Assembly: GCA_946965045.2 (NCBI GenBank)
Contig: OX337235.1
Coordinates: 992,001 to 1,056,000 of the forward strand
Reading direction: 5' to 3'
Length of the DNA stretch: 64,000 bases
DNA from: Epithemia pelagica
Lineage: Eukaryota; Protista; Bacillariophyta
Part shown: piece after piece, positions 46,062 to 53,911 of the stretch
How the letters are laid out: every line of letters begins with the position of its first letter
How positions within the stretch are numbered: position 1 is the first letter of the stretch
Translations under genes and position numbers: made by a program
The notes under the pieces: generated by a model
The model's input: the letters and a program-made list of their open reading frames with translations, nothing else
Told to the model about the DNA's origin: nothing
The model's database searches: none

Positions 46062-46632
46062 TATTCCGTGGATGCTTCAATTCGATCGTTGGTTCTTCTT
46101 CGCGCTGTTGTTGTGCTGGTTCTTTTGATACACGAACTCAAAAGATTCTGTTCAGTTGTGGCCAATTGCGAACTGGGTCGCGATCCGACTCCCCAGATAA
46201 CACGACCTTAACGCGAATCATTCCGAAGAGCCCATGCCGATGCCGGGAGACAAAGACAACTCGCAACTACGTAGATGCAAGGATCCATGACCTCAATGGT
46301 AGGTTGAGAAACAATGGCAAACTGTGTTCAGAACTAGAAAGAAAGGCTGCAACCTGCAAAGGCATTCGGAAGATCCGATTGGCAGGATGTGACACGATCA
46401 GTTATAGCTGATTCGTGTGGGGGGTGCTTCGGGAAGATCTATCATCGGCCGCGGCGCATTTTCTTGCAAGCTTGGCGATGACCAAAATCCTGATTGAAAA
46501 ACAGGATCAACTCGGAGCAACCGTCGAATGAACAGTATCTCTCCACGACGTCTCGTTTCCCCAGTGATCTCATATTTGCAATCACCGAGAAATCTCAGAC
46601 CGACCTCAAAGTCGATATCTCATTTCTGCAAA

Positions 46633-47307
46633 ATGACAACAACCAGCAGCACACAACAACGTAACCATGTTATCCGTGAAGCCGTCTTGTCGGATGTTCC
46701 AGACTTGGTCCAGTTATCGAGAACTGTGGCGCTGTCAACCCATACTCAGCAAGGCGATGATTTGGACAAGACTGGGTTTTTGGTATCCGATTTTACCACG
46801 CAAGATTACACACACTTTCTGGAAACAGCACAACACTTTTTGGTATTGCGAATGAAAGGTGAAAACCAGGACAATGATGAGGATGGAACAAACGAGCCGT
46901 TGGCGGCCTTTTTGTTGGCCTACGGATCGGAGAGCATCACGCCGGACCAAGAACTCAACACGCATATCAAGCAAGTCCTGTATCCCAACAAGCCATTTGT
47001 GTTGATCAAACAGATTGTGGTATCGCACCAATTTCGTCGGCAGGGTTTGGCACAAACGCTGTACCAAACTCTGTACGAGCGCATGCCAGAGTATTACAGA
47101 GACGAATCCTTGGCACGCCCCATGTACACGGCCATTGTAGCGGAGCCCAACAATCCAATCTCCATTGCCTTCCACAATCGATTGGGATTTGAACAAGCTT
47201 ATATGTATACTCCCAAACAAGATCCCAAAGCTCGCTACATATTTTGCAATCAGGATGTACCAGGGACACTGGAGAAACTCAAGCAAACCGCCAATAACAA
47301 CTCGTAG
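46633..47307 (+). CDS. Stand-alone GNAT-family acetyltransferase
   Basis: IREAVLSDVPDL; IKQIVVSHQFRRQGLAQTLY (acetyl-CoA motif A); NNPISIAFHNRLGF (motif B). Confidence 0.85.
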   Translation: MTTTSSTQQRNHVIREAVLSDVPDLVQLSRTVALSTHTQQGDDLDKTGFLVSDFTTQDYTHFLETAQHFLVLRMKGENQDNDEDGTNEPLAAFLLAYGSESITPDQELNTHIKQVLYPNKPFVLIKQIVVSHQFRRQGLAQTLYQTLYERMPEYYRDESLARPMYTAIVAEPNNPISIAFHNRLGFEQAYMYTPKQDPKARYIFCNQDVPGTLEKLKQTANNNS

Positions 47308-47597: not shown

Positions 47598-49046
47598 CTA
47601 CATTTTCTTTTGGTATTTTCCCTTTTCCAGTGTCACACATGTCTTGTCCGCATTGGCCAATTCAATCTTGGCCGTCCCAGTTGCTTGATCCAATTCCAAC
47701 ACGACACCTTCTCCTTGATCGGTCGTGACCATGTCACCTACCCGAGCCCACGCCGAGCCCTTGGCGGCTTGCAAGGCCGCATCGGCTTCATTGGTTGCGG
47801 CCGATGCATTTTGGGACAAACCCAAACCATCCAAGACACCGTACACAACCTTTTCCAAGTTGAGCGTGTAAAAGTGCAAGACGGGGGCGCCGCCGTCCAA
47901 GAGCTTTTGGCAGAGTTTGACACCAAAGTCGACGCCAAATTGTTTGACGGCATCGGCATCATCTTTGATAGCTTCCATGGAATCACGCAAGTCTTGCGGA
48001 ACACGTGTTTTGCAAAATTTGGTCATTTTGACAAAGCCCGCATAAGCATTAATGCACATGAGACCTGGTACAATAGGACACTTGATGCCAATCTCTCGAC
48101 AGTCCTTGACAAACTGCAAGAAGACGTCGGCATCAAAGAACATTTGAGTAATGATAAAGTCTGTTACAGAGAGCAAGTAAAGGAAGTATGAGACAAAACG
48201 GAATGCAACAAGATGTAAATGAGTAAAAAATGAACCTTCTCGTCATCTGGTCAAAACGTGAGCCAAATCACTGGATGGTCACTCACCTGATCCAGCATCG
48301 ATCTTCTCTTTCAGATAAGCCAGTTCCTTTTTGTAATCTTCATCTTTACATGCAAACGTTACACCTTCGGGTGTCACACTGGATCGTGCCAGTTCGGTCG
48401 GTGTCAAGGTGGAGGGATCGTCAATTTGCGAAATAGCATTCGGATGCCCTTCGGGGTATCCAGCAACACTTATACCCATTTCTTTGCCAAACGGCAGACT
48501 TTCCCGAATGAATTTGACCAGATCCAGAGCACAGGTAAAGCCACCTTCGGCTGCCTTCCATTCTTCTTGACCCGCTGGCGGGTCTCCCCGAAGTGCGACA
48601 ATGTTGCGAATTCCGCCATCGTAGGCGGCCTGTAGGGCGTTTTGCACATCTTGTTTGGGATCGGTGGAACCCGCAATGTTGGTACAAGTCATGTGCAAAT
48701 TGGCCACATGGCCCGTGTTGTGTGCTTGCAAGGCAATTTGCAAGGACAGGTCAGCTGTCGATCCACCGGCACCCCATGTCACATCGGTAAAAGCTGGTTT
48801 GACCGTCTCTTTCATGCGGTCCATGCGACTGTACAAATTCTAGGAGCAGTAGAAGCATGGAAGGGAAAAATCATGTGAGAGAAATCGATCCTCCCAAAAT
48901 AACCATGGCGTCTTTCATAGACGTCGTCCAACGACCAAACGTACCTTTACACCCTCTTCGGTACGAGGGGGAAAGTATTCCAATGACACAAAGGGCGCCG
49001 AAGTTTCGGCAGAGATAATGTCGATAATCTTGGCATTCGATGTCAT
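47598..49046 (-). CDS. MTHFR: Methylenetetrahydrofolate reductase (short MetF-like form), 3 exons
   Basis: Exons 49046-48945, 48839-48287, 48160-47598; 405 aa. SLEYFPPRT, DVTWGAGG, HMTCTN, ALRGDPP, VAGYPEGHP, FIITQMFFD, HFYTLN. Confidence 0.95.
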
Positions 49047-49949: not shown

Positions 49950-51966
49950 ATGGGACCGGCTGCAAAGGATATGGAGAAACAAGTCAAGATTGTGACATCC
50001 CATGACGATATGGAGGATCCGACCAATCCAGTGGGATTTTCGCCCAGTCGACGTGAAATTTTCGTCCAACAAGACGAGGAGGAGAATGACATCCTATTGG
50101 CGCGCACCACTGTGGATGCCGAAAAACGATACAAGACCGAAGATTGGCCTCGCATCAAAAAGTACCTGGATCGCAAGACCCCCTTGATGCGAAATGCGGC
50201 CGCGCCAGACATTGCCGATATTGTGGCGCTGGCCAACAAAATGTGTCTCTCCAAAGCCAAGAAACAAGGAAAGGAAGCCATTCGCTCGTCTTCTGGGTTC
50301 TACTTGTCTCATCTGAGTGATCAAGACTATACAGAGTATAAGTCCAAGGCTGAACACTTTCTTGTCTTACATCACAATGGCAAGTTGATTGGGTTCATCT
50401 TGGCCTATTCTTCCACGTTGATTGACCAAAATGATCCGAATGAAGAAGTCGATGTGTACATTCGCGATCATGTGGTAAATGATCCCAATCGGCCCTTTGT
50501 CTTGGTAAAGCAGTTGGTCGTCGATCAAGAGTTCAAGCATTGCGGATTTGCGGAGCTATTGTACATGGAAGTCTATGCTCGTGTGGTGCATCTCCATTCC
50601 GATGATGCAACTCCTTGGTCAGTGTACACAGAGATCACTGCCGACCACCCTGGTTTGAGGGACTTTCATACCCTTGTGGGATATCCACAAGAGGTGGCCC
50701 GGTACGATCCGCAAAAAGTGTCTTCTCGATCCTATCGCGCTGACACGAGGTTGATCCTGGCCAATCATCACGTTACGGATTCTCTGAACGAATTGGCAGC
50801 CAGATTTGCGAGCAATTCCACTCTAGACACCCGCCCTGTCGACGATGCAAGCTCCATGCTGGACCCTCACTGTGTTGGTGTTGGAGTCTGCCTTTATTGG
50901 ATTGAGCCACCGGATCCCAGTGGTACTTTCTATGCCGATGTCCGTATCATGTTGAAATGGCGAAAGCCTGCAGTGGAAAAGTTGTATGAGCATCCTCGCC
51001 TCAGGGGTCCAGGGATTGCTCGTACCGAGATCGACATGAAAGCACATGGAAAAGAGTTACGATTTCCAAGATACGCGTTTAACGAGTTCAACACCGAGAC
51101 AACGCAACACTATGCTTATATCGACCGGCATGACCCACCGGATGTTATCACAATGCAAAAAGTAGTGCGCGGAAATTTCATTGGCAAATCATTGGGTAAG
51201 TACAAGTATGTTTGAGATCATGCTTGGGGGATCTGCTTTCATTTCCATTTCTCAACAATGGCTTTTTGATATACTATCCACAGATCTTCGTAATTTTCCG
51301 GCTGATACGCAAATGTTAGAGTTCAAGTTTCGCATGTGGGACAATGATCCCGACGACCGTTGTCGATACTTTCGCCAACTGTACTATGTTGACAACACCG
51401 CGTGGCAACTGGGTGTCAAACGAGTGGTGGATGTTCCGACTTGCTCGTTCTTGGCTGCCCAGGTAGAATTGGGAAAGGACCCAGTGGCTGGTACCAGTTT
51501 CTTGGCCATTCGCATTCCCTGCGTTCGTAATACGGGATACTATCTACGCACAGTTGCTGTCCCTCTTTTCTTCATTTCCTCTCTGACCTTGACCAGTATT
51601 GGCCTTGACGAACTCTCTTCACGAATTGAGTTGAATACAGTCTTATTGCTCACCAATGTGGCCTACCTTTTCGTAACCAAGGATGAAACACCGAGGACTT
51701 CACATGTCACGAAACTTGATCTCGTGACGTATTTCTGCTTCCTGGCTCCTTGGTTCTTGATTGTTTTGAACTATATTGCCTTTCGCGTGGACATGAGTCT
51801 TACTCTCGCTGACAACATCAGCTACATGGTATGCGGAACAGTTGTTGGTTTTATTGGATTCATGATTGTCTTTATGAGGACCAAGTACATCTTCACAGTC
51901 CAGCACAACTCGCAATTGGGAGAATTCGATCGCATCGATAAGAAAAAGAGCATCAAGAAGCATTGA
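49950..51966 (+). CDS. GNAT-domain / Cys-less pentameric ligand-gated ion channel fusion, 2 exons
   Basis: Exons 49950-51195 and 51284-51966 (GT-AG intron 51196-51283); 642 aa. N-terminal GNAT collinear with the 46633 gene. Then a pLGIC ECD (YADVRIMLKW, Pro-loop DLRNFPADTQ, VRNTGYY) and four TM helices (VPLFFISSL; SSRIELNTVLLLT; TPRTSHVTKLD; M4). Confidence 0.85.
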
Positions 51967-52362: not shown

Positions 52363-53911
52363 CTACATGTCGCCAACTGGGGCGGAGGCTCGGTCGAAGT
52401 AGCAACGAGCCGTAGCAAAGCCATCCACCTCGACTGGAGCTTCGGGGTGGAGGTAAAATTTCGCGAGCTGCTTGAGGTCCTTCGCGTCCTCAAGCGCAAG
52501 GCGGCGTTTTTCACGGAATTCCTGCCATTCCTCCTCTAAAGTCAATAGATAGACGAACAAATGTGAGAGAAAAGATCAAAAGGTTTCAGTGTGAGCCATC
52601 CATGCAACTTACCTTCCGGATCGGTGACAGGAGCAGAAGCACGATCAAAGTAGCAACGAGTGGTAGCAAATCCATCAGTTTCAACAGGAGCTCCGGGATG
52701 CAAGTAGAAACCAGCCATCTGTTTGAGATTCTTCGCATCTCCCAGAACGCGGCGACGCTCTTCCTTGAACTCCTCCCATTCTTGCTCTGTGGGAAAATAT
52801 AAATTGTAAGCGGAATATCAACCAAGGATAACAGGGAAGCACACGCAAGACTTACCTTCTGCTAACTCAGGGTCTACAGGGGCAGAGGGGCGATCAAAGT
52901 AGCAACGAGCGGTGGCAAAGCCATCGACTGCAACGGGAGCTTCCGGGTGGTGATAATAACTTGCCATTTGCTTCAGATTCATGGCATCCTCGAGAACGCG
53001 ACGCCGTTCTTCACTGAAATCTTTCCATTCTTGATCTGTTTAGTAAAAGCAAAGTATCTGAGCGCAGGCTGTGCAATTGTACAATGTCCGATCAACAACT
53101 ACGTACCTTCTACAAGATCGGGGTCCACAGGAGCGGAAGCACGATCAAAGTAGCATCGGGCTGTCGCAAATCCATCCGCAGCAACAGGGGCTTCAGGGTG
53201 AAGGTAATAGCCTGCCATCTGCTTGAGAAGCTTGGCATCTTCCAACACACGACGGCGCTCAGCAAGGAACTCCCTCCATTCTTGTTCTATGAACAGCAAC
53301 GTTGAATGAGCATCTCGATCGATTGGGACGTTCTTCATGCATTGTGCGATGCCTTGGACTTACCTTCCTGTTCCTCCGGGTTGATCGGCGCAGAAGCACG
53401 GTCGAAATAGCAACGGGCAGTGGCAAAGCCGTCTACTTTCACAGCTGCTCCCGGGTGGAGAAAGAACGTTGCCATTTGCTTGAGGACTTTTGCATCCTCA
53501 CGAACGCGGAAACGTTCCTCGCGAAACTCTTCCCATTCTTTATCTGTGCGGAGAGCAGATTGCTGTTGAGTTATCGACCTCTTCAAGAAATCAATTGGAA
53601 GACCGTTTCAACCTACCTTCCACATCATCAATCTCTTCCATCTCCTCAACAGCTTCCGCTGGTTCGGTGACTTCCGTAGGCTCTTCATCAGGAACAACCT
53701 TCGATTCAATAGTTCCGATCTGTTCACGGATTTTGAAGACCTCATCCGTGTTTCCCTCTGGATGAAAGACGGTAAAGAATAAGATCACATCGATGATTTT
53801 CCAAGACATTCCAAAAAGGAAGGACACATGGCACTTACTCTTTTCATGGAAGATGATCTGAGCGCGAAGCTTTTCGATTTTTTTCTGGTCCTTGCTGCGA
53901 AATCCAAACAT
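52363..53911 (-). CDS. Diatom repeat protein (five ~60-aa 'YxHP...ARCYFDRASAP' repeats), 7 exons
   Basis: Exons 53911-53839, 53757-53617, 53543-53364, 53286-53107, 53035-52856, 52786-52613, 52535-52363. All introns are GT-AG, 69-81 nt, phase 1. Spliced CDS is 1101 nt (366 aa) with no internal stop. Confidence 0.85.

What the first reader, a model, noticed from the sequence alone, without database searches (positions are those of the whole stretch)
49950..51966. GNAT acetyltransferase fused N-terminally to a complete Cys-less pentameric ligand-gated ion channel
Seen: after one canonical intron the gene reads as a single 642-aa protein. It has a whole GNAT domain, then a pLGIC extracellular domain (FPxD Pro-loop without the Cys pair), then four TM helices with a short M3-M4 loop as in GLIC/ELIC. 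The GNAT and the first half of the ECD share one exon, so the fusion is not a splicing artefact. Known: prokaryote-like pLGICs can carry extra N-terminal sensor domains (Cache, periplasmic-binding, DeCLIC NTD); I know of no described GNAT-pLGIC. The fused GNAT has a weakened acetyl-CoA motif (QEFKHCGFA versus QFRRQGLA in its neighbour), and no signal peptide is visible. M2 keeps 9' Leu and 0' Arg, lacks a -1' Glu and has Glu at 2'. Inference: this could be an enzyme-coupled channel ('chanzyme') or a channel gated by an acyl-CoA/amine-sensing GNAT fold, possibly with unusual topology or in an internal membrane.
Basis: partly seen in the sequence, partly recalled or inferred. Interest (0 to 1): 0.88.

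Follow-up and report, generated by a model that had tools for sequence, protein, structure and literature searches.

The report
Acetyltransferase fused to a pentameric channel
A diatom gene really does join a GNAT acetyltransferase to a complete Cys-less pentameric ligand-gated ion channel subunit, the fusion is conserved across diatoms, and its sequence features suggest that the "extracellular" ligand-binding domain faces the cytosol.

Summary
ATG 49950, one GT..AG intron (51196-51283) and stop at 51966 give a 642-aa protein. It has a GNAT fold (about residues 75-285), a Pro-loop (FPAD) beta-sandwich and four TM helices.

A profile of the channel half hits ELIC, sTeLIC, DeCLIC and GABA-A beta at E about 1e-12. 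An AlphaFold model of a 41%-identical orthologue (pLDDT 90) superposes on GABA-A/sTeLIC (TM 0.70-0.78). The fusion is no artefact: at least ten diverged relatives carry it, including an intronless 582-aa ORF in Cylindrotheca closterium and Chaetoceros sequences.

No member has a signal peptide. K/R residues lie on the ligand-binding side of the membrane and on a basic C-tail, the opposite of signal-peptide-bearing bacterial relatives (p about 3e-10). On a tree the fusions form one clade inside a large signal-peptide-less eukaryotic group, which also holds a WW-domain fusion.

My reading is an inside-out pLGIC with GNAT and ligand-binding domain in the cytosol. This is inferred, not shown. In this species the fused GNAT is unusually diverged (33% vs 49% identity) and a canonical free paralogue lies 2.6 kb upstream.

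The intron is not confirmed by reads. I found no paper describing this architecture. The scan also noted this stretch as s1-239141.

The parts
49950..51195 (+). Exon 1: residues 1-415 plus the first base of codon 416. Holds the acidic N-terminal leader, the GNAT domain, the linker and the first half of the ligand-binding domain.
   Evidence: P0177 in the public collection is identical to this ORF. It aligns to orthologues from about residue 45.
51196..51283 (+). Intron, 88 nt, GTAAGT...CAG, phase 1, with an in-frame stop at 51213-51215.
   Evidence: Removing it restores a gap-free alignment to orthologues. No RNA read crosses it.
51284..51966 (+). Exon 2: residues 416-642 and the stop. Holds the Pro-loop, the second half of the ligand-binding domain, M1-M4 and a basic C-terminal tail.
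   Evidence: RNA-library contigs lie at 51328-51696 and 51722-51966.
50172..50804 (+). GNAT acetyltransferase domain (about residues 75-285).
   Evidence: Pfam PF00583 at 18.7 bits on the window and 22-39 bits in orthologues. AF2 of window 50130-50840 gives pLDDT 83.6. Foldseek matches Naa60, PPT acetyltransferase, ArsN and RimI at E 1e-9 to 1e-7.
50535..50552 (+). GNAT motif A (acetyl-CoA pyrophosphate loop), K196-H-C-G-F-A201. Lys replaces the usual Q/R in the first position.
   Evidence: Alignment. The orthologues mostly have R-x-x-G-x-G/A. An allele in run X8 has A201V/E202G.
50862..51522 (+). pLGIC ligand-binding beta-sandwich (residues 305-495), interrupted by the intron.
   Evidence: The profile reaches sTeLIC over profile positions 10-285 at E 3e-12. 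In the orthologue's AF2 model the strands run 284-473. Foldseek TM by target is 0.70-0.78 to GABA-A beta3 and sTeLIC.
51295..51306 (+). Pro-loop motif F-P-A-D (residues 420-423), with no flanking Cys pair.
   Evidence: FPxD is present in nearly all of the relatives aligned.
51553..51606 (+). M1 (residues 506-523), with the conserved helix proline, preceded by R..YYLR.
51625..51678 (+). M2 pore helix (residues 530-547). R529 = 0', E531 = 2', L538 = 9'.
   Evidence: Alignment to ELIC M2; residue numbering.
51715..51783 (+). M3 (residues 560-582), followed by an 11-residue acidic M3-M4 loop.
51817..51876 (+). M4 (residues 594-613).
51877..51963 (+). Basic C-terminal tail (29 residues, 8 K/R) with a conserved L-G motif.
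   Evidence: Signal-peptide-bearing relatives have tails of 0-15 residues (median 2.5) with almost no K/R.
46528..47307 (+). Free-standing GNAT paralogue (259 aa) of the same subfamily. It ends where the channel half begins in the fusions.
   Evidence: It is 38-44% identical to orthologue GNATs but only 31% to the fused GNAT of the same genome. The only free-standing hit is an allele of the same species.

Best explanation
[quoted passage not shown] In each subunit a GNAT acetyltransferase domain is fused directly in front of the ligand-binding beta-sandwich.

Shown:
- The fusion is one coding unit, conserved across pennate and centric diatoms.
- Both halves have their expected folds.
- The residues that couple the ligand-binding domain to the pore are conserved: Pro-loop FPxD, pre-M1 Arg, the M2-M3 loop with its Pro, and 9' Leu in most members.

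Inferred: there is no signal peptide, the 500-residue N-terminal part is a cytosol-type enzyme plus a folded domain, and the K/R residues lie on the ligand-binding side and on the C-tail. M1 therefore most likely inserts N-in. GNAT, ligand-binding domain and C-tail would then all be cytosolic, with only the short acidic M1-M2 and M3-M4 loops on the far side. The channel would be gated from the cytosol, in the plasma membrane or an endomembrane.

Most likely mechanism (inferred, not tested): a small cytosolic amine or amino acid binds the inter-subunit pocket, where a conserved loop-B Trp sits next to an acidic D-N-D-P-D-D loop. The ring of five GNATs then either acetylates that ligand, ending or creating the signal, or reports acetyl-CoA occupancy to the ligand-binding domain.

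In this species the fused GNAT has diverged fast, while a canonical free paralogue sits 2.6 kb upstream. Catalysis here may have moved partly to the free enzyme, leaving the fused domain mainly regulatory.
For: One gene:
- The spliced protein aligns end to end with P0002-P0012, P0020 and P0163.
- C. closterium has an intronless 582-aa ORF with an in-frame stop 11 codons upstream of the ATG.
- The Chaetoceros curvisetus MMETSP peptide and the C. neogracilis EukProt protein carry both halves.

Channel:
- Profile against PDB sequences gives ELIC 9e-13, sTeLIC 3e-12, DeCLIC 3e-10 and GABA-A beta 5e-7.
- The nearest non-fused relatives carry Pfam Neur_chan_LBD/memb.
- AF2 gives pLDDT 90 and pTM 0.86; Foldseek gives E 1e-17 and TM by target 0.70-0.78.

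GNAT.

Topology:
- No hydrophobic N-terminus in the window protein or in the well-defined orthologue N-termini; the two apparent exceptions are discussed in the report.
- The start codons are the first ATG after in-frame stops in three genomes.
- K+R on the ligand-binding side minus the opposite side is +1 to +5 in all 8 fusions. The median is +2 in 55 other signal-peptide-less relatives and -5 in 18 signal-peptide-bearing ones (Mann-Whitney p 2.8e-10).
- A WW domain is fused N-terminally in clade member P0078.
- The signal-peptide and no-signal-peptide groups split once on the tree (SH-aLRT 96). The fusions are one clade (92) inside the no-signal-peptide side.

GNAT divergence: window against orthologues is GNAT 33%, ligand-binding domain 51%, TMD 35.5%. 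Among the orthologues the figures are 49/51/38. The fused GNAT has the longest branch in the GNAT tree.
Against: - No read crosses the intron, and RNA support in this species is a few low-depth contigs.
- The topology rests on statistics and the absence of a signal peptide. No dedicated predictor was run and there is no experiment. Lumenal GNATs exist (NAT8-type, from general knowledge), so a lumenal GNAT is not impossible in principle.
- The full-length model is of an orthologue and is a monomer. Pentamer formation, conduction and GNAT-LBD contacts are untested.
- The window's motif A starts with Lys, the P-x-N of motif B is lost, and an allele has Val at the G/A position. The fused GNAT may therefore be inactive.
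- P0002 has Ala at 9'.
- The ligand idea rests on one aligned Trp and on fold neighbours.
Confidence: 0.6

Rival explanations
1. Canonical topology. The GNAT and ligand-binding domain are exported (extracellular or in the lumen of an organelle) through an unrecognised signal, an unannotated 5' exon or an unconventional route. The GNAT then works in a lumen supplied with acetyl-CoA or acts as an extracellular sensor, like the Cache/PBP/NTD additions of bacterial pLGICs.
For: All experimentally studied pLGICs have the ligand-binding domain outside. Known N-terminal additions are periplasmic sensors placed after a signal peptide (PMC549065, read). P0004's longest ORF starts with a hydrophobic stretch.
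Against: The hydrophobic stretch of P0004 lies upstream of the conserved M-x-x-FVDN start shared with the Chaetoceros sequences, so it looks like translated 5' UTR. Three genomes have in-frame stops upstream of a hydrophilic start. The charge bias is opposite to that of signal-peptide-bearing relatives. A WW fusion occurs in the same clade. No pair of Cys is conserved together, so there is no obligate disulfide.
Confidence: 0.15
2. The GNAT is a pseudo-enzyme in this species, or in the whole family. It no longer transfers acetyl groups and serves only as a ligand- or CoA-binding regulatory cap or an assembly domain. Catalysis, if needed, comes from the free paralogue at 46528-47307.
For: The window's GNAT is 33% identical to orthologues against 49% among them, while its ligand-binding domain and TMD are normally conserved. 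Motif A starts with Lys, the P-x-N of motif B is deleted, and an allele has A201V. A canonical free paralogue is adjacent and appears species-specific.
Against: The fold is still predicted with confidence. G-x-A of motif A is retained. Orthologues mostly keep a canonical R-x-x-G-x-G/A and pass Pfam's cutoff. This rival concerns the enzyme only and is compatible with the architecture and topology of the best explanation.
Confidence: 0.3
3. It is not an ion channel. The pLGIC fold is kept only as a pentamerising membrane anchor that places five GNATs on a membrane, comparable in logic to membrane-bound Naa60, which acetylates the cytosolic N-termini of membrane proteins.
For: The top fold and profile neighbours of the GNAT include Naa60 and other N-terminal acetyltransferases. 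Pore-lining positions vary between orthologues, for example Ala at 9' in P0002 and variable -1'/0'/2'.
Against: The best-conserved part of the TMD is M2 plus the M2-M3 loop. The Pro-loop and pre-M1 Arg that couple binding to gating are also conserved. That pattern is what a working gate predicts and an anchor does not.
Confidence: 0.08
4. Gene-model artefact: two neighbouring genes, or a pseudogene, joined by a wrongly inferred intron.
For: No RNA read spans 51196-51283. One marine RNA contig carries a stop at codon 456.
Against: GNAT and 111 residues of the ligand-binding domain lie in one exon. Orthologues encode the whole protein in uninterrupted ORFs. The junction aligns without a gap.
Confidence: 0.03

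Closest known systems
Prokaryotic Cys-less pLGICs ELIC, GLIC and sTeLIC
   Same: A Pro-loop (FPxD) without the Cys pair, a compact beta-sandwich, four TM helices and a very short M3-M4 loop. Best sequence-profile hits are ELIC 9e-13 and sTeLIC 3e-12. Foldseek TM by target to sTeLIC is 0.75-0.78.
   Different: Those have a signal peptide, a periplasmic ligand-binding domain, almost no C-tail and K/R in the M3-M4 loop. This family has no signal peptide, an N-terminal enzyme domain, an acidic M3-M4 loop and a basic 15-30-residue C-tail.
DeCLIC and the PBP-I / Cache / MCP-N fused bacterial pLGICs (Tasneem et al. 2004, PMC549065)
   Same: An extra domain fused N-terminally to the ligand-binding domain. 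DeCLIC is a significant profile and fold hit.
   Different: The bacterial additions are periplasmic sensor domains placed after a signal peptide. Here the addition is a cofactor-dependent cytosol-type enzyme fold with no signal peptide.
Cys-less pLGICs of unicellular eukaryotes (Jaiteh, Taly and Henin 2016, PMC4795631; diatom survey PMC11085791)
   Same: The same broad group: Cys-less pLGICs were catalogued in diatoms and other protists.
   Different: Term searches within those papers found no mention of acetyltransferase or GNAT, nor any discussion of signal peptides, N-terminal domains or a reversed orientation.
Animal anionic Cys-loop receptors (GABA-A beta3, GlyR, RDL)
   Same: The best Foldseek matches to the channel half: E about 1e-17, about 325 aligned columns, TM by target 0.70-0.75.
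   Different: They have a Cys-loop disulfide, a signal peptide, a long basic cytoplasmic M3-M4 domain and an extracellular ligand-binding domain. Identity is only 16-18%.
GNAT acetyltransferases Naa60/NatF, phosphinothricin/ArsN acetyltransferases and RimI
   Same: The closest folds to the window's own GNAT: E 1e-9 to 1e-7, TM by target 0.61-0.80. They are also weak profile hits. All acetylate alpha-amino groups of amino acids or peptides.
   Different: Identity is 10-17%, with no specific subfamily match in NCBIfam. None is fused to a channel.
Channel-enzyme fusions ('chanzymes') such as TRPM6/7 (general knowledge, not tested here)
   Same: An ion-channel subunit covalently carrying an enzyme domain on the cytosolic side.
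   Different: An unrelated fold (tetrameric TRP with a C-terminal alpha-kinase). I found no pLGIC example in the papers searched.

Membership tests
[quoted passage not shown] | N-terminal beta-sandwich ligand-binding domain followed by four TM helices in one chain | tested here: met
   Profile hits to ELIC, sTeLIC, DeCLIC, GABA-A and GLIC. The AF2 model of the orthologue has strands at 284-473 and four helices at 475-598. Foldseek gives E 1e-17 and TM by target 0.70-0.78. The window has hydrophobic segments at the aligned places.
[quoted passage not shown] | Conserved Pro-loop motif (F/Y-P-x-D) between beta6 and beta7 | tested here: met
   FPAD at residues 420-423. FPxD is present in nearly all of the relatives aligned.
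[quoted passage not shown] | Gating and pore hallmarks: pre-M1 Arg, M1 Pro, M2 9' Leu, M2-M3 loop Pro | tested here: met
   The window has R497/R504, P509, L538 and P552, aligned to ELIC. The 9' position is Ala in orthologue P0002.
[quoted passage not shown] | Pfam Neur_chan_LBD / Neur_chan_memb above the gathering score | tested here: not met
   The window scores 11.5 bits (E 0.37) for Neur_chan_memb and has no LBD hit. Orthologues reach at most 16.4 bits. The nearest non-fused relatives do pass. This explains why databases annotate only the GNAT.
[quoted passage not shown] | Signal peptide and an extracellular or periplasmic ligand-binding domain | tested here: not met
   There is no hydrophobic N-terminus in the family, and the charge bias is reversed. 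Orientation itself was not measured.
[quoted passage not shown] | Assembly into a pentamer with a ligand-gated pore | not testable with these tools
   Only monomer prediction was available. No electrophysiology.
Cys-loop receptors (metazoan type) | Disulfide-bonded 13-residue Cys-loop | tested here: not met
   No Cys flanks FPAD. The two partly conserved Cys of the ligand-binding domain do not co-vary.
GNAT (Gcn5-related N-acetyltransferase) superfamily | GNAT alpha/beta fold | tested here: met
   AF2 of the window's own domain gives pLDDT 83.6. Foldseek matches Naa60, PPT acetyltransferase, ArsN, RimI and Ard1. Pfam PF00583 passes in orthologues and in the free paralogue.
GNAT (Gcn5-related N-acetyltransferase) superfamily | Motif A Q/R-x-x-G-x-G/A acetyl-CoA loop | tested here: inconclusive
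   The window has K-H-C-G-F-A, so G-x-A is kept but the first position is Lys. An allele has Val at the last position. Orthologues mostly have the canonical R-x-x-G-x-G/A.
GNAT (Gcn5-related N-acetyltransferase) superfamily | Acetyl-CoA-dependent acyl transfer | not testable with these tools
   Needs an enzyme assay.

The most novel reading that the evidence does not exclude
A eukaryote-wide clade of signal-peptide-less Cys-less pLGICs is inserted inside-out, with the ligand-binding domain in the cytosol. Its members would be channels gated by intracellular ligands. The clade includes protists, and at least one sea-urchin family annotated as 'GABA receptor subunit-like'. The diatom GNAT fusions would then be true chanzymes: acetyl-CoA-dependent acetylation of the agonist amine, or acetyl-CoA occupancy itself, sets gating. 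That would tie carbon/nitrogen metabolic state directly to ion flux across a membrane.
Probability: 0.3. Interest if true: 0.92.

Novelty: new variant of a known kind. Interest (0 to 1): 0.8.

Why it matters
Every studied pLGIC has been described as a receptor for extracellular or periplasmic ligands. This is a conserved family in which the ligand-binding domain is welded to an acetyl-CoA-dependent enzyme fold, has no export signal, and carries a reversed charge bias. It would be the first enzyme-coupled pLGIC. It would also be a handle on a possibly large, overlooked group of cytosol-facing pLGICs.

The family is invisible to domain databases, because only the GNAT passes Pfam thresholds. That probably explains why it has not been described.

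The claim is directly testable: tag topology, inside-out patches with amines, amino acids, acetyl-CoA and CoA, and a GNAT assay. Some diatoms are genetically tractable. For diatom biology it points to a link between metabolite state and membrane excitability.

Tried and rejected
- Pfam and NCBIfam on the window's two pieces gave only sub-threshold hits. The case had to be made with orthologue profiles and structure.
- RNA reads: the two high-share runs turned out to be genomic contigs. The RNA runs gave only exon fragments, so the splice could not be confirmed.
- The window's full spliced protein could not be handed to the structure tool, since no reference spans an intron. I modelled a 41%-identical orthologue for the whole chain and the window's own GNAT separately.
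- A conserved disulfide in the ligand-binding domain would argue for an oxidising compartment. The two Cys do not co-vary, so I rejected it.
- Free-standing orthologues of the neighbouring GNAT in other organisms: none found in the length window searched, only an allele of the same species.
- The GNAT tree does not resolve whether the free and fused GNATs of this genome are sisters, because two long branches meet.
- AFDB cluster search found only channel-part matches and no representative with the whole architecture.
- Substrate identity could not be inferred. NCBIfam hits are far below cutoffs and PDB neighbours are generic.
- Polymorphism counts are too few to test selection.
- Eight literature searches found no GNAT-pLGIC and no inverted-topology pLGIC. 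The library lacks most subscription journals, so this is not proof of absence.
Full report
**1. What is in the sequence**

The + strand has an ATG at 49950. This is the first ATG after an in-frame stop 63 codons upstream. The frame runs to 51195 and is followed by GTAAGT. An acceptor ..CCACAG ends at 51283, and the frame resumes at 51284 and stops at 51964-51966.

Splicing out the 88 nt gives a 1929-nt CDS and a 642-aa protein. Unspliced, the frame ends at 51213-51215. The database protein P0177 is exactly that unspliced ORF.

The only substantial hydrophobic segments lie in the last 140 residues. Minus-strand ORFs over the gene are all short, 112 aa or less.

**2. Is the fusion real?**

A search with exon 1 found full-length relatives of 538-659 aa that continue through a channel-like C-terminal half. 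These align end to end with both window pieces. The splice junction (..GKSL|DLRNFPADTQ..) falls in a gap-free, conserved stretch.

An exhaustive profile search added more. At least ten mutually diverged sequences carry GNAT plus channel in one chain: P0002, P0003, P0004, P0006, P0007/P0163, P0008, P0010, P0011, P0012 and P0020.

The named sources are these:
- Cylindrotheca closterium, a genome annotation.
- Chaetoceros curvisetus MMETSP0717, a transcript-derived peptide.
- Chaetoceros neogracilis, a EukProt protein.

In the C. closterium genome the gene is a single uninterrupted 582-aa ORF, with an in-frame stop 11 codons upstream of the ATG. A Chaetoceros metagenome contig holds the 604-codon frame without an intron, though with one internal stop at codon 66 in that contig.

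Public reads for this species did not settle the splice. The two best runs were genomic contigs. Two RNA libraries held only exon fragments: 50607-50965, which spans the end of the GNAT, the linker and the start of the ligand-binding domain; 51328-51696; and 51722-51966. Nothing lay in the intron or across it.

So the intron rests on comparative evidence, while the fusion itself rests on single-ORF orthologues.

**3. The two halves**

*GNAT.* The window's own domain scores 18.7 bits on PF00583, against a cutoff of 20.7. Most of the fused orthologues scanned (22-39 bits; P0008 falls short at 16.6) and the neighbouring free GNAT (30.5 bits) pass the cutoff.

AlphaFold on the window's own residues 61-297 gave pLDDT 83.6 and pTM 0.83, with the GNAT strand/helix order. 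Foldseek then returned Naa60, phosphinothricin and ArsN acetyltransferases, RimI, Ard1 and Naa50, at E 1e-9 to 1e-7 and TM by target 0.61-0.80.

*Channel.* Pfam is nearly blind here (Neur_chan_memb E 0.37). A profile of five orthologue C-halves hit PDB sequences as follows:

| Target | E-value |
|---|---|
| ELIC | 9e-13 |
| sTeLIC (profile positions 10-285) | 3e-12 |
| DeCLIC | 3e-10 |
| GABA-A beta2 | 5e-7 |
| GLIC and alpha7 | about 1e-5 |

Against 1.84 billion representatives the same profile found 2424 proteins at E<1e-3. The nearest non-fused ones carry Neur_chan_LBD and Neur_chan_memb.

An AlphaFold model of orthologue P0002 gave pLDDT 90 and pTM 0.86. P0002 is 41% identical to the window protein over residues 50-630. 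The model shows a GNAT at 60-260, a beta-sandwich at 284-473 and four helices at 475-598. Its channel half superposes on GABA-A beta3, RDL, GlyR and sTeLIC at E about 1e-17 and TM by target 0.70-0.78, and it also matches DeCLIC, at lower TM.

The window keeps these hallmarks:
- FPAD Pro-loop without flanking Cys.
- Pre-M1 Arg and YYL.
- M1 Pro.
- M2 with Arg 0', Glu 2', Leu 9' and Ser -1'.
- M2-M3 Pro.
- An 11-residue M3-M4 loop.

**4. Orientation in the membrane**

The window protein and the well-defined orthologue N-termini have no hydrophobic stretch. Several start with a shared acidic M-x-x-FVDN leader. Two raised a crude hydrophobicity flag. The hydrophobic start of P0004's longest ORF lies upstream of that conserved start, and it looks like translated 5' UTR. 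P0012's stretch lies in a sequence-specific insertion.

I then compared loop charges across the relatives found. I used an HMM alignment for M1-M3 and hydropathy for M4. The measure is K+R within the M2-M3 loop plus the first 15 tail residues, minus K+R in the M1-M2 and M3-M4 loops.

| Group | n | Median | Share >0 |
|---|---|---|---|
| Signal-peptide-like N-terminus (bacterial type) | 18 | -5 | 0% |
| Other relatives without one | 55 | +2 | 73% |
| GNAT fusions | 8 | +3 | 100% |

The Mann-Whitney p is 2.8e-10 (unrestricted counts).

The two types also differ in kind. The signal-peptide type has a tail of 0-15 residues (median 2.5) with almost no K/R, and 3-7 K/R in M3-M4. The other type has an acidic M3-M4 loop and a basic tail, 15-30 residues long in the fusions and up to about 120 in others. 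For the window the full count is 14 K/R on the ligand-binding side against 2 on the other.

On a quick maximum-likelihood tree of the channel domain (82 rows), the signal-peptide type and the rest separate at one branch (SH-aLRT 96). The fusions form one clade (92) nested among signal-peptide-less sequences, with stand-alone P0022/P0133 as sister (93).

One member of that group, P0078, carries a Pfam WW domain at residues 3-30 in front of its ligand-binding domain. WW is an intracellular module, from general knowledge.

The two partly conserved Cys of the ligand-binding domain do not co-vary, so no obligate disulfide argues for an oxidising compartment.

Taken together with the established positive-inside rule, and with the difficulty of translocating a large folded N-terminal domain without a signal peptide, the best reading is N-in/C-in. 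GNAT, ligand-binding domain and tail would all be cytosolic. This is inference, and I put it at about 0.65-0.7.

**5. How it probably works**

The M2 to M2-M3-loop stretch, the Pro-loop and the pre-M1 Arg are the best-conserved parts of the channel half. That pattern fits a working binding-to-gate coupling rather than a mere anchor.

After the Pro-loop comes an invariant R-M-W-D followed by an acidic D-N-D-P-D-D loop. In the profile alignment the Trp falls on the Phe of ELIC's ..EPFSY.. segment. I recall that residue as the loop-B aromatic that contacts the agonist amine; I did not check this here. That suggests a cationic amine or amino-acid ligand.

The GNAT's nearest folds acetylate alpha-amino groups. 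The simplest mechanism is therefore a cytosolic amine-gated channel. Its attached GNAT ring either acetylates, and so removes or makes, the agonist, or signals acetyl-CoA occupancy. None of this is tested.

Ion selectivity cannot be called, because positions -1', 0' and 2' vary among orthologues.

**6. A species-specific twist**

Against seven orthologues, the window's ligand-binding domain (51%) and TMD (35.5%) are as conserved as orthologues are among themselves (51% and 38%). Its GNAT is only 33% identical, against 49% among orthologues. It also has the longest branch in the GNAT tree.

Three further signs point the same way:
- Motif A begins with Lys.
- The P-x-N of motif B is deleted.
- An allele has A201V/E202G.

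A 259-aa free GNAT of the same subfamily lies at 46528-47307, on the same strand. It has a canonical R-R-Q-G-L-A motif, is 38-44% identical to orthologue GNATs, and ends exactly at the domain boundary. Its only free-standing match is an allele of the same species.

MTHFR lies between the two genes on the minus strand. This arrangement is not conserved in Cylindrotheca or Chaetoceros. Relaxation or subfunctionalisation of the fused GNAT is a reasonable reading, at about 0.3-0.5.

**7. Comparison with what is known**

Cys-less pLGICs in diatoms and other protists have been catalogued (PMC4795631, PMC11085791). Term searches within those papers found no mention of acetyltransferase or GNAT. PMC4795631 also has no mention of signal peptides, N-terminal domains or a reversed orientation.

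Eight full-text searches found no GNAT-pLGIC and no inverted pLGIC. The AFDB cluster library returned only channel-part matches.

Database entries for the family are labelled only as N-acetyltransferase-domain proteins. The protein is a member of the pLGIC superfamily by fold and motifs. It fails two customary features: Pfam thresholds and the signal peptide.

I class it as a new variant of a known kind. The inside-out reading, if confirmed for the whole clade, would be more than that.

**8. Limits**

- The splice is not confirmed by reads.
- The full-chain model is of an orthologue, and a monomer.
- The signal-peptide call is a crude hydropathy rule, and four rows it flagged have the clade's positive charge bias.
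- The tree is a quick search.
- Many relatives come from metagenome ORFs whose starts may be wrong.
- The held literature is incomplete.

Noticed in passing
P0078 (531 aa; hit of the channel profile): A WW domain (PF00397, 41 bits, residues 3-30) is fused in front of a signal-peptide-less pLGIC. This is a second cytosol-type N-terminal fusion in the same clade.
   Followed up: partly
P0019 (1160 aa), P0025 (2451 aa), P0077 (2473 aa); Single chains hold 3 to 6 consecutive pLGIC units (LBD plus TM repeats). They may be concatenated oligomers, perhaps a whole pentamer in one polypeptide.
   Followed up: no
P0138 cluster: Sea-urchin proteins annotated as GABA or acetylcholine receptor subunit-like belong to the signal-peptide-less group. 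They have a hydrophilic N-terminus and a 118-residue basic C-tail (22 K/R). The putative inside-out type therefore reaches into animals.
   Followed up: no
window 46528-47307 (+) and 47598-48836 (-): A free GNAT paralogue of the fused domain has a 40-residue Ser/Arg-rich leader. A split MTHFR gene lies on the opposite strand between it and the fusion gene. The arrangement is not conserved in Cylindrotheca or Chaetoceros.
   Followed up: partly
window 51404: One oligo-dT marine RNA contig (run X2, depth 7) reads G>A here, turning the conserved Trp456 codon into a stop. It could be a strain variant, a pseudogene allele or an error.
   Followed up: no
L002 5371-5373 and 7420-9267: The Chaetoceros metagenome contig has a stop at codon 66 of the orthologue, where other sources read through. 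Its tail-to-tail neighbour is a flavin amine oxidase (PF01593). An earlier scan note (s1-252538) reports a GNAT-amine oxidase fusion elsewhere in the window's genome, which is a possible polyamine lead.
   Followed up: no
window 52363-53911 (-): Several minus-strand ORFs repeat a roughly 60-aa unit (..FYLHPEAPV..DGFATARCYFDRASAPV..). This is the repeat protein noted separately by the scan as s1-239219.
   Followed up: no
window 50551 and 50554: A second allele or strain (run X8, protein P0001) changes motif A from ..CGFAE.. to ..CGFVG.. in the fused GNAT.
   Followed up: partly
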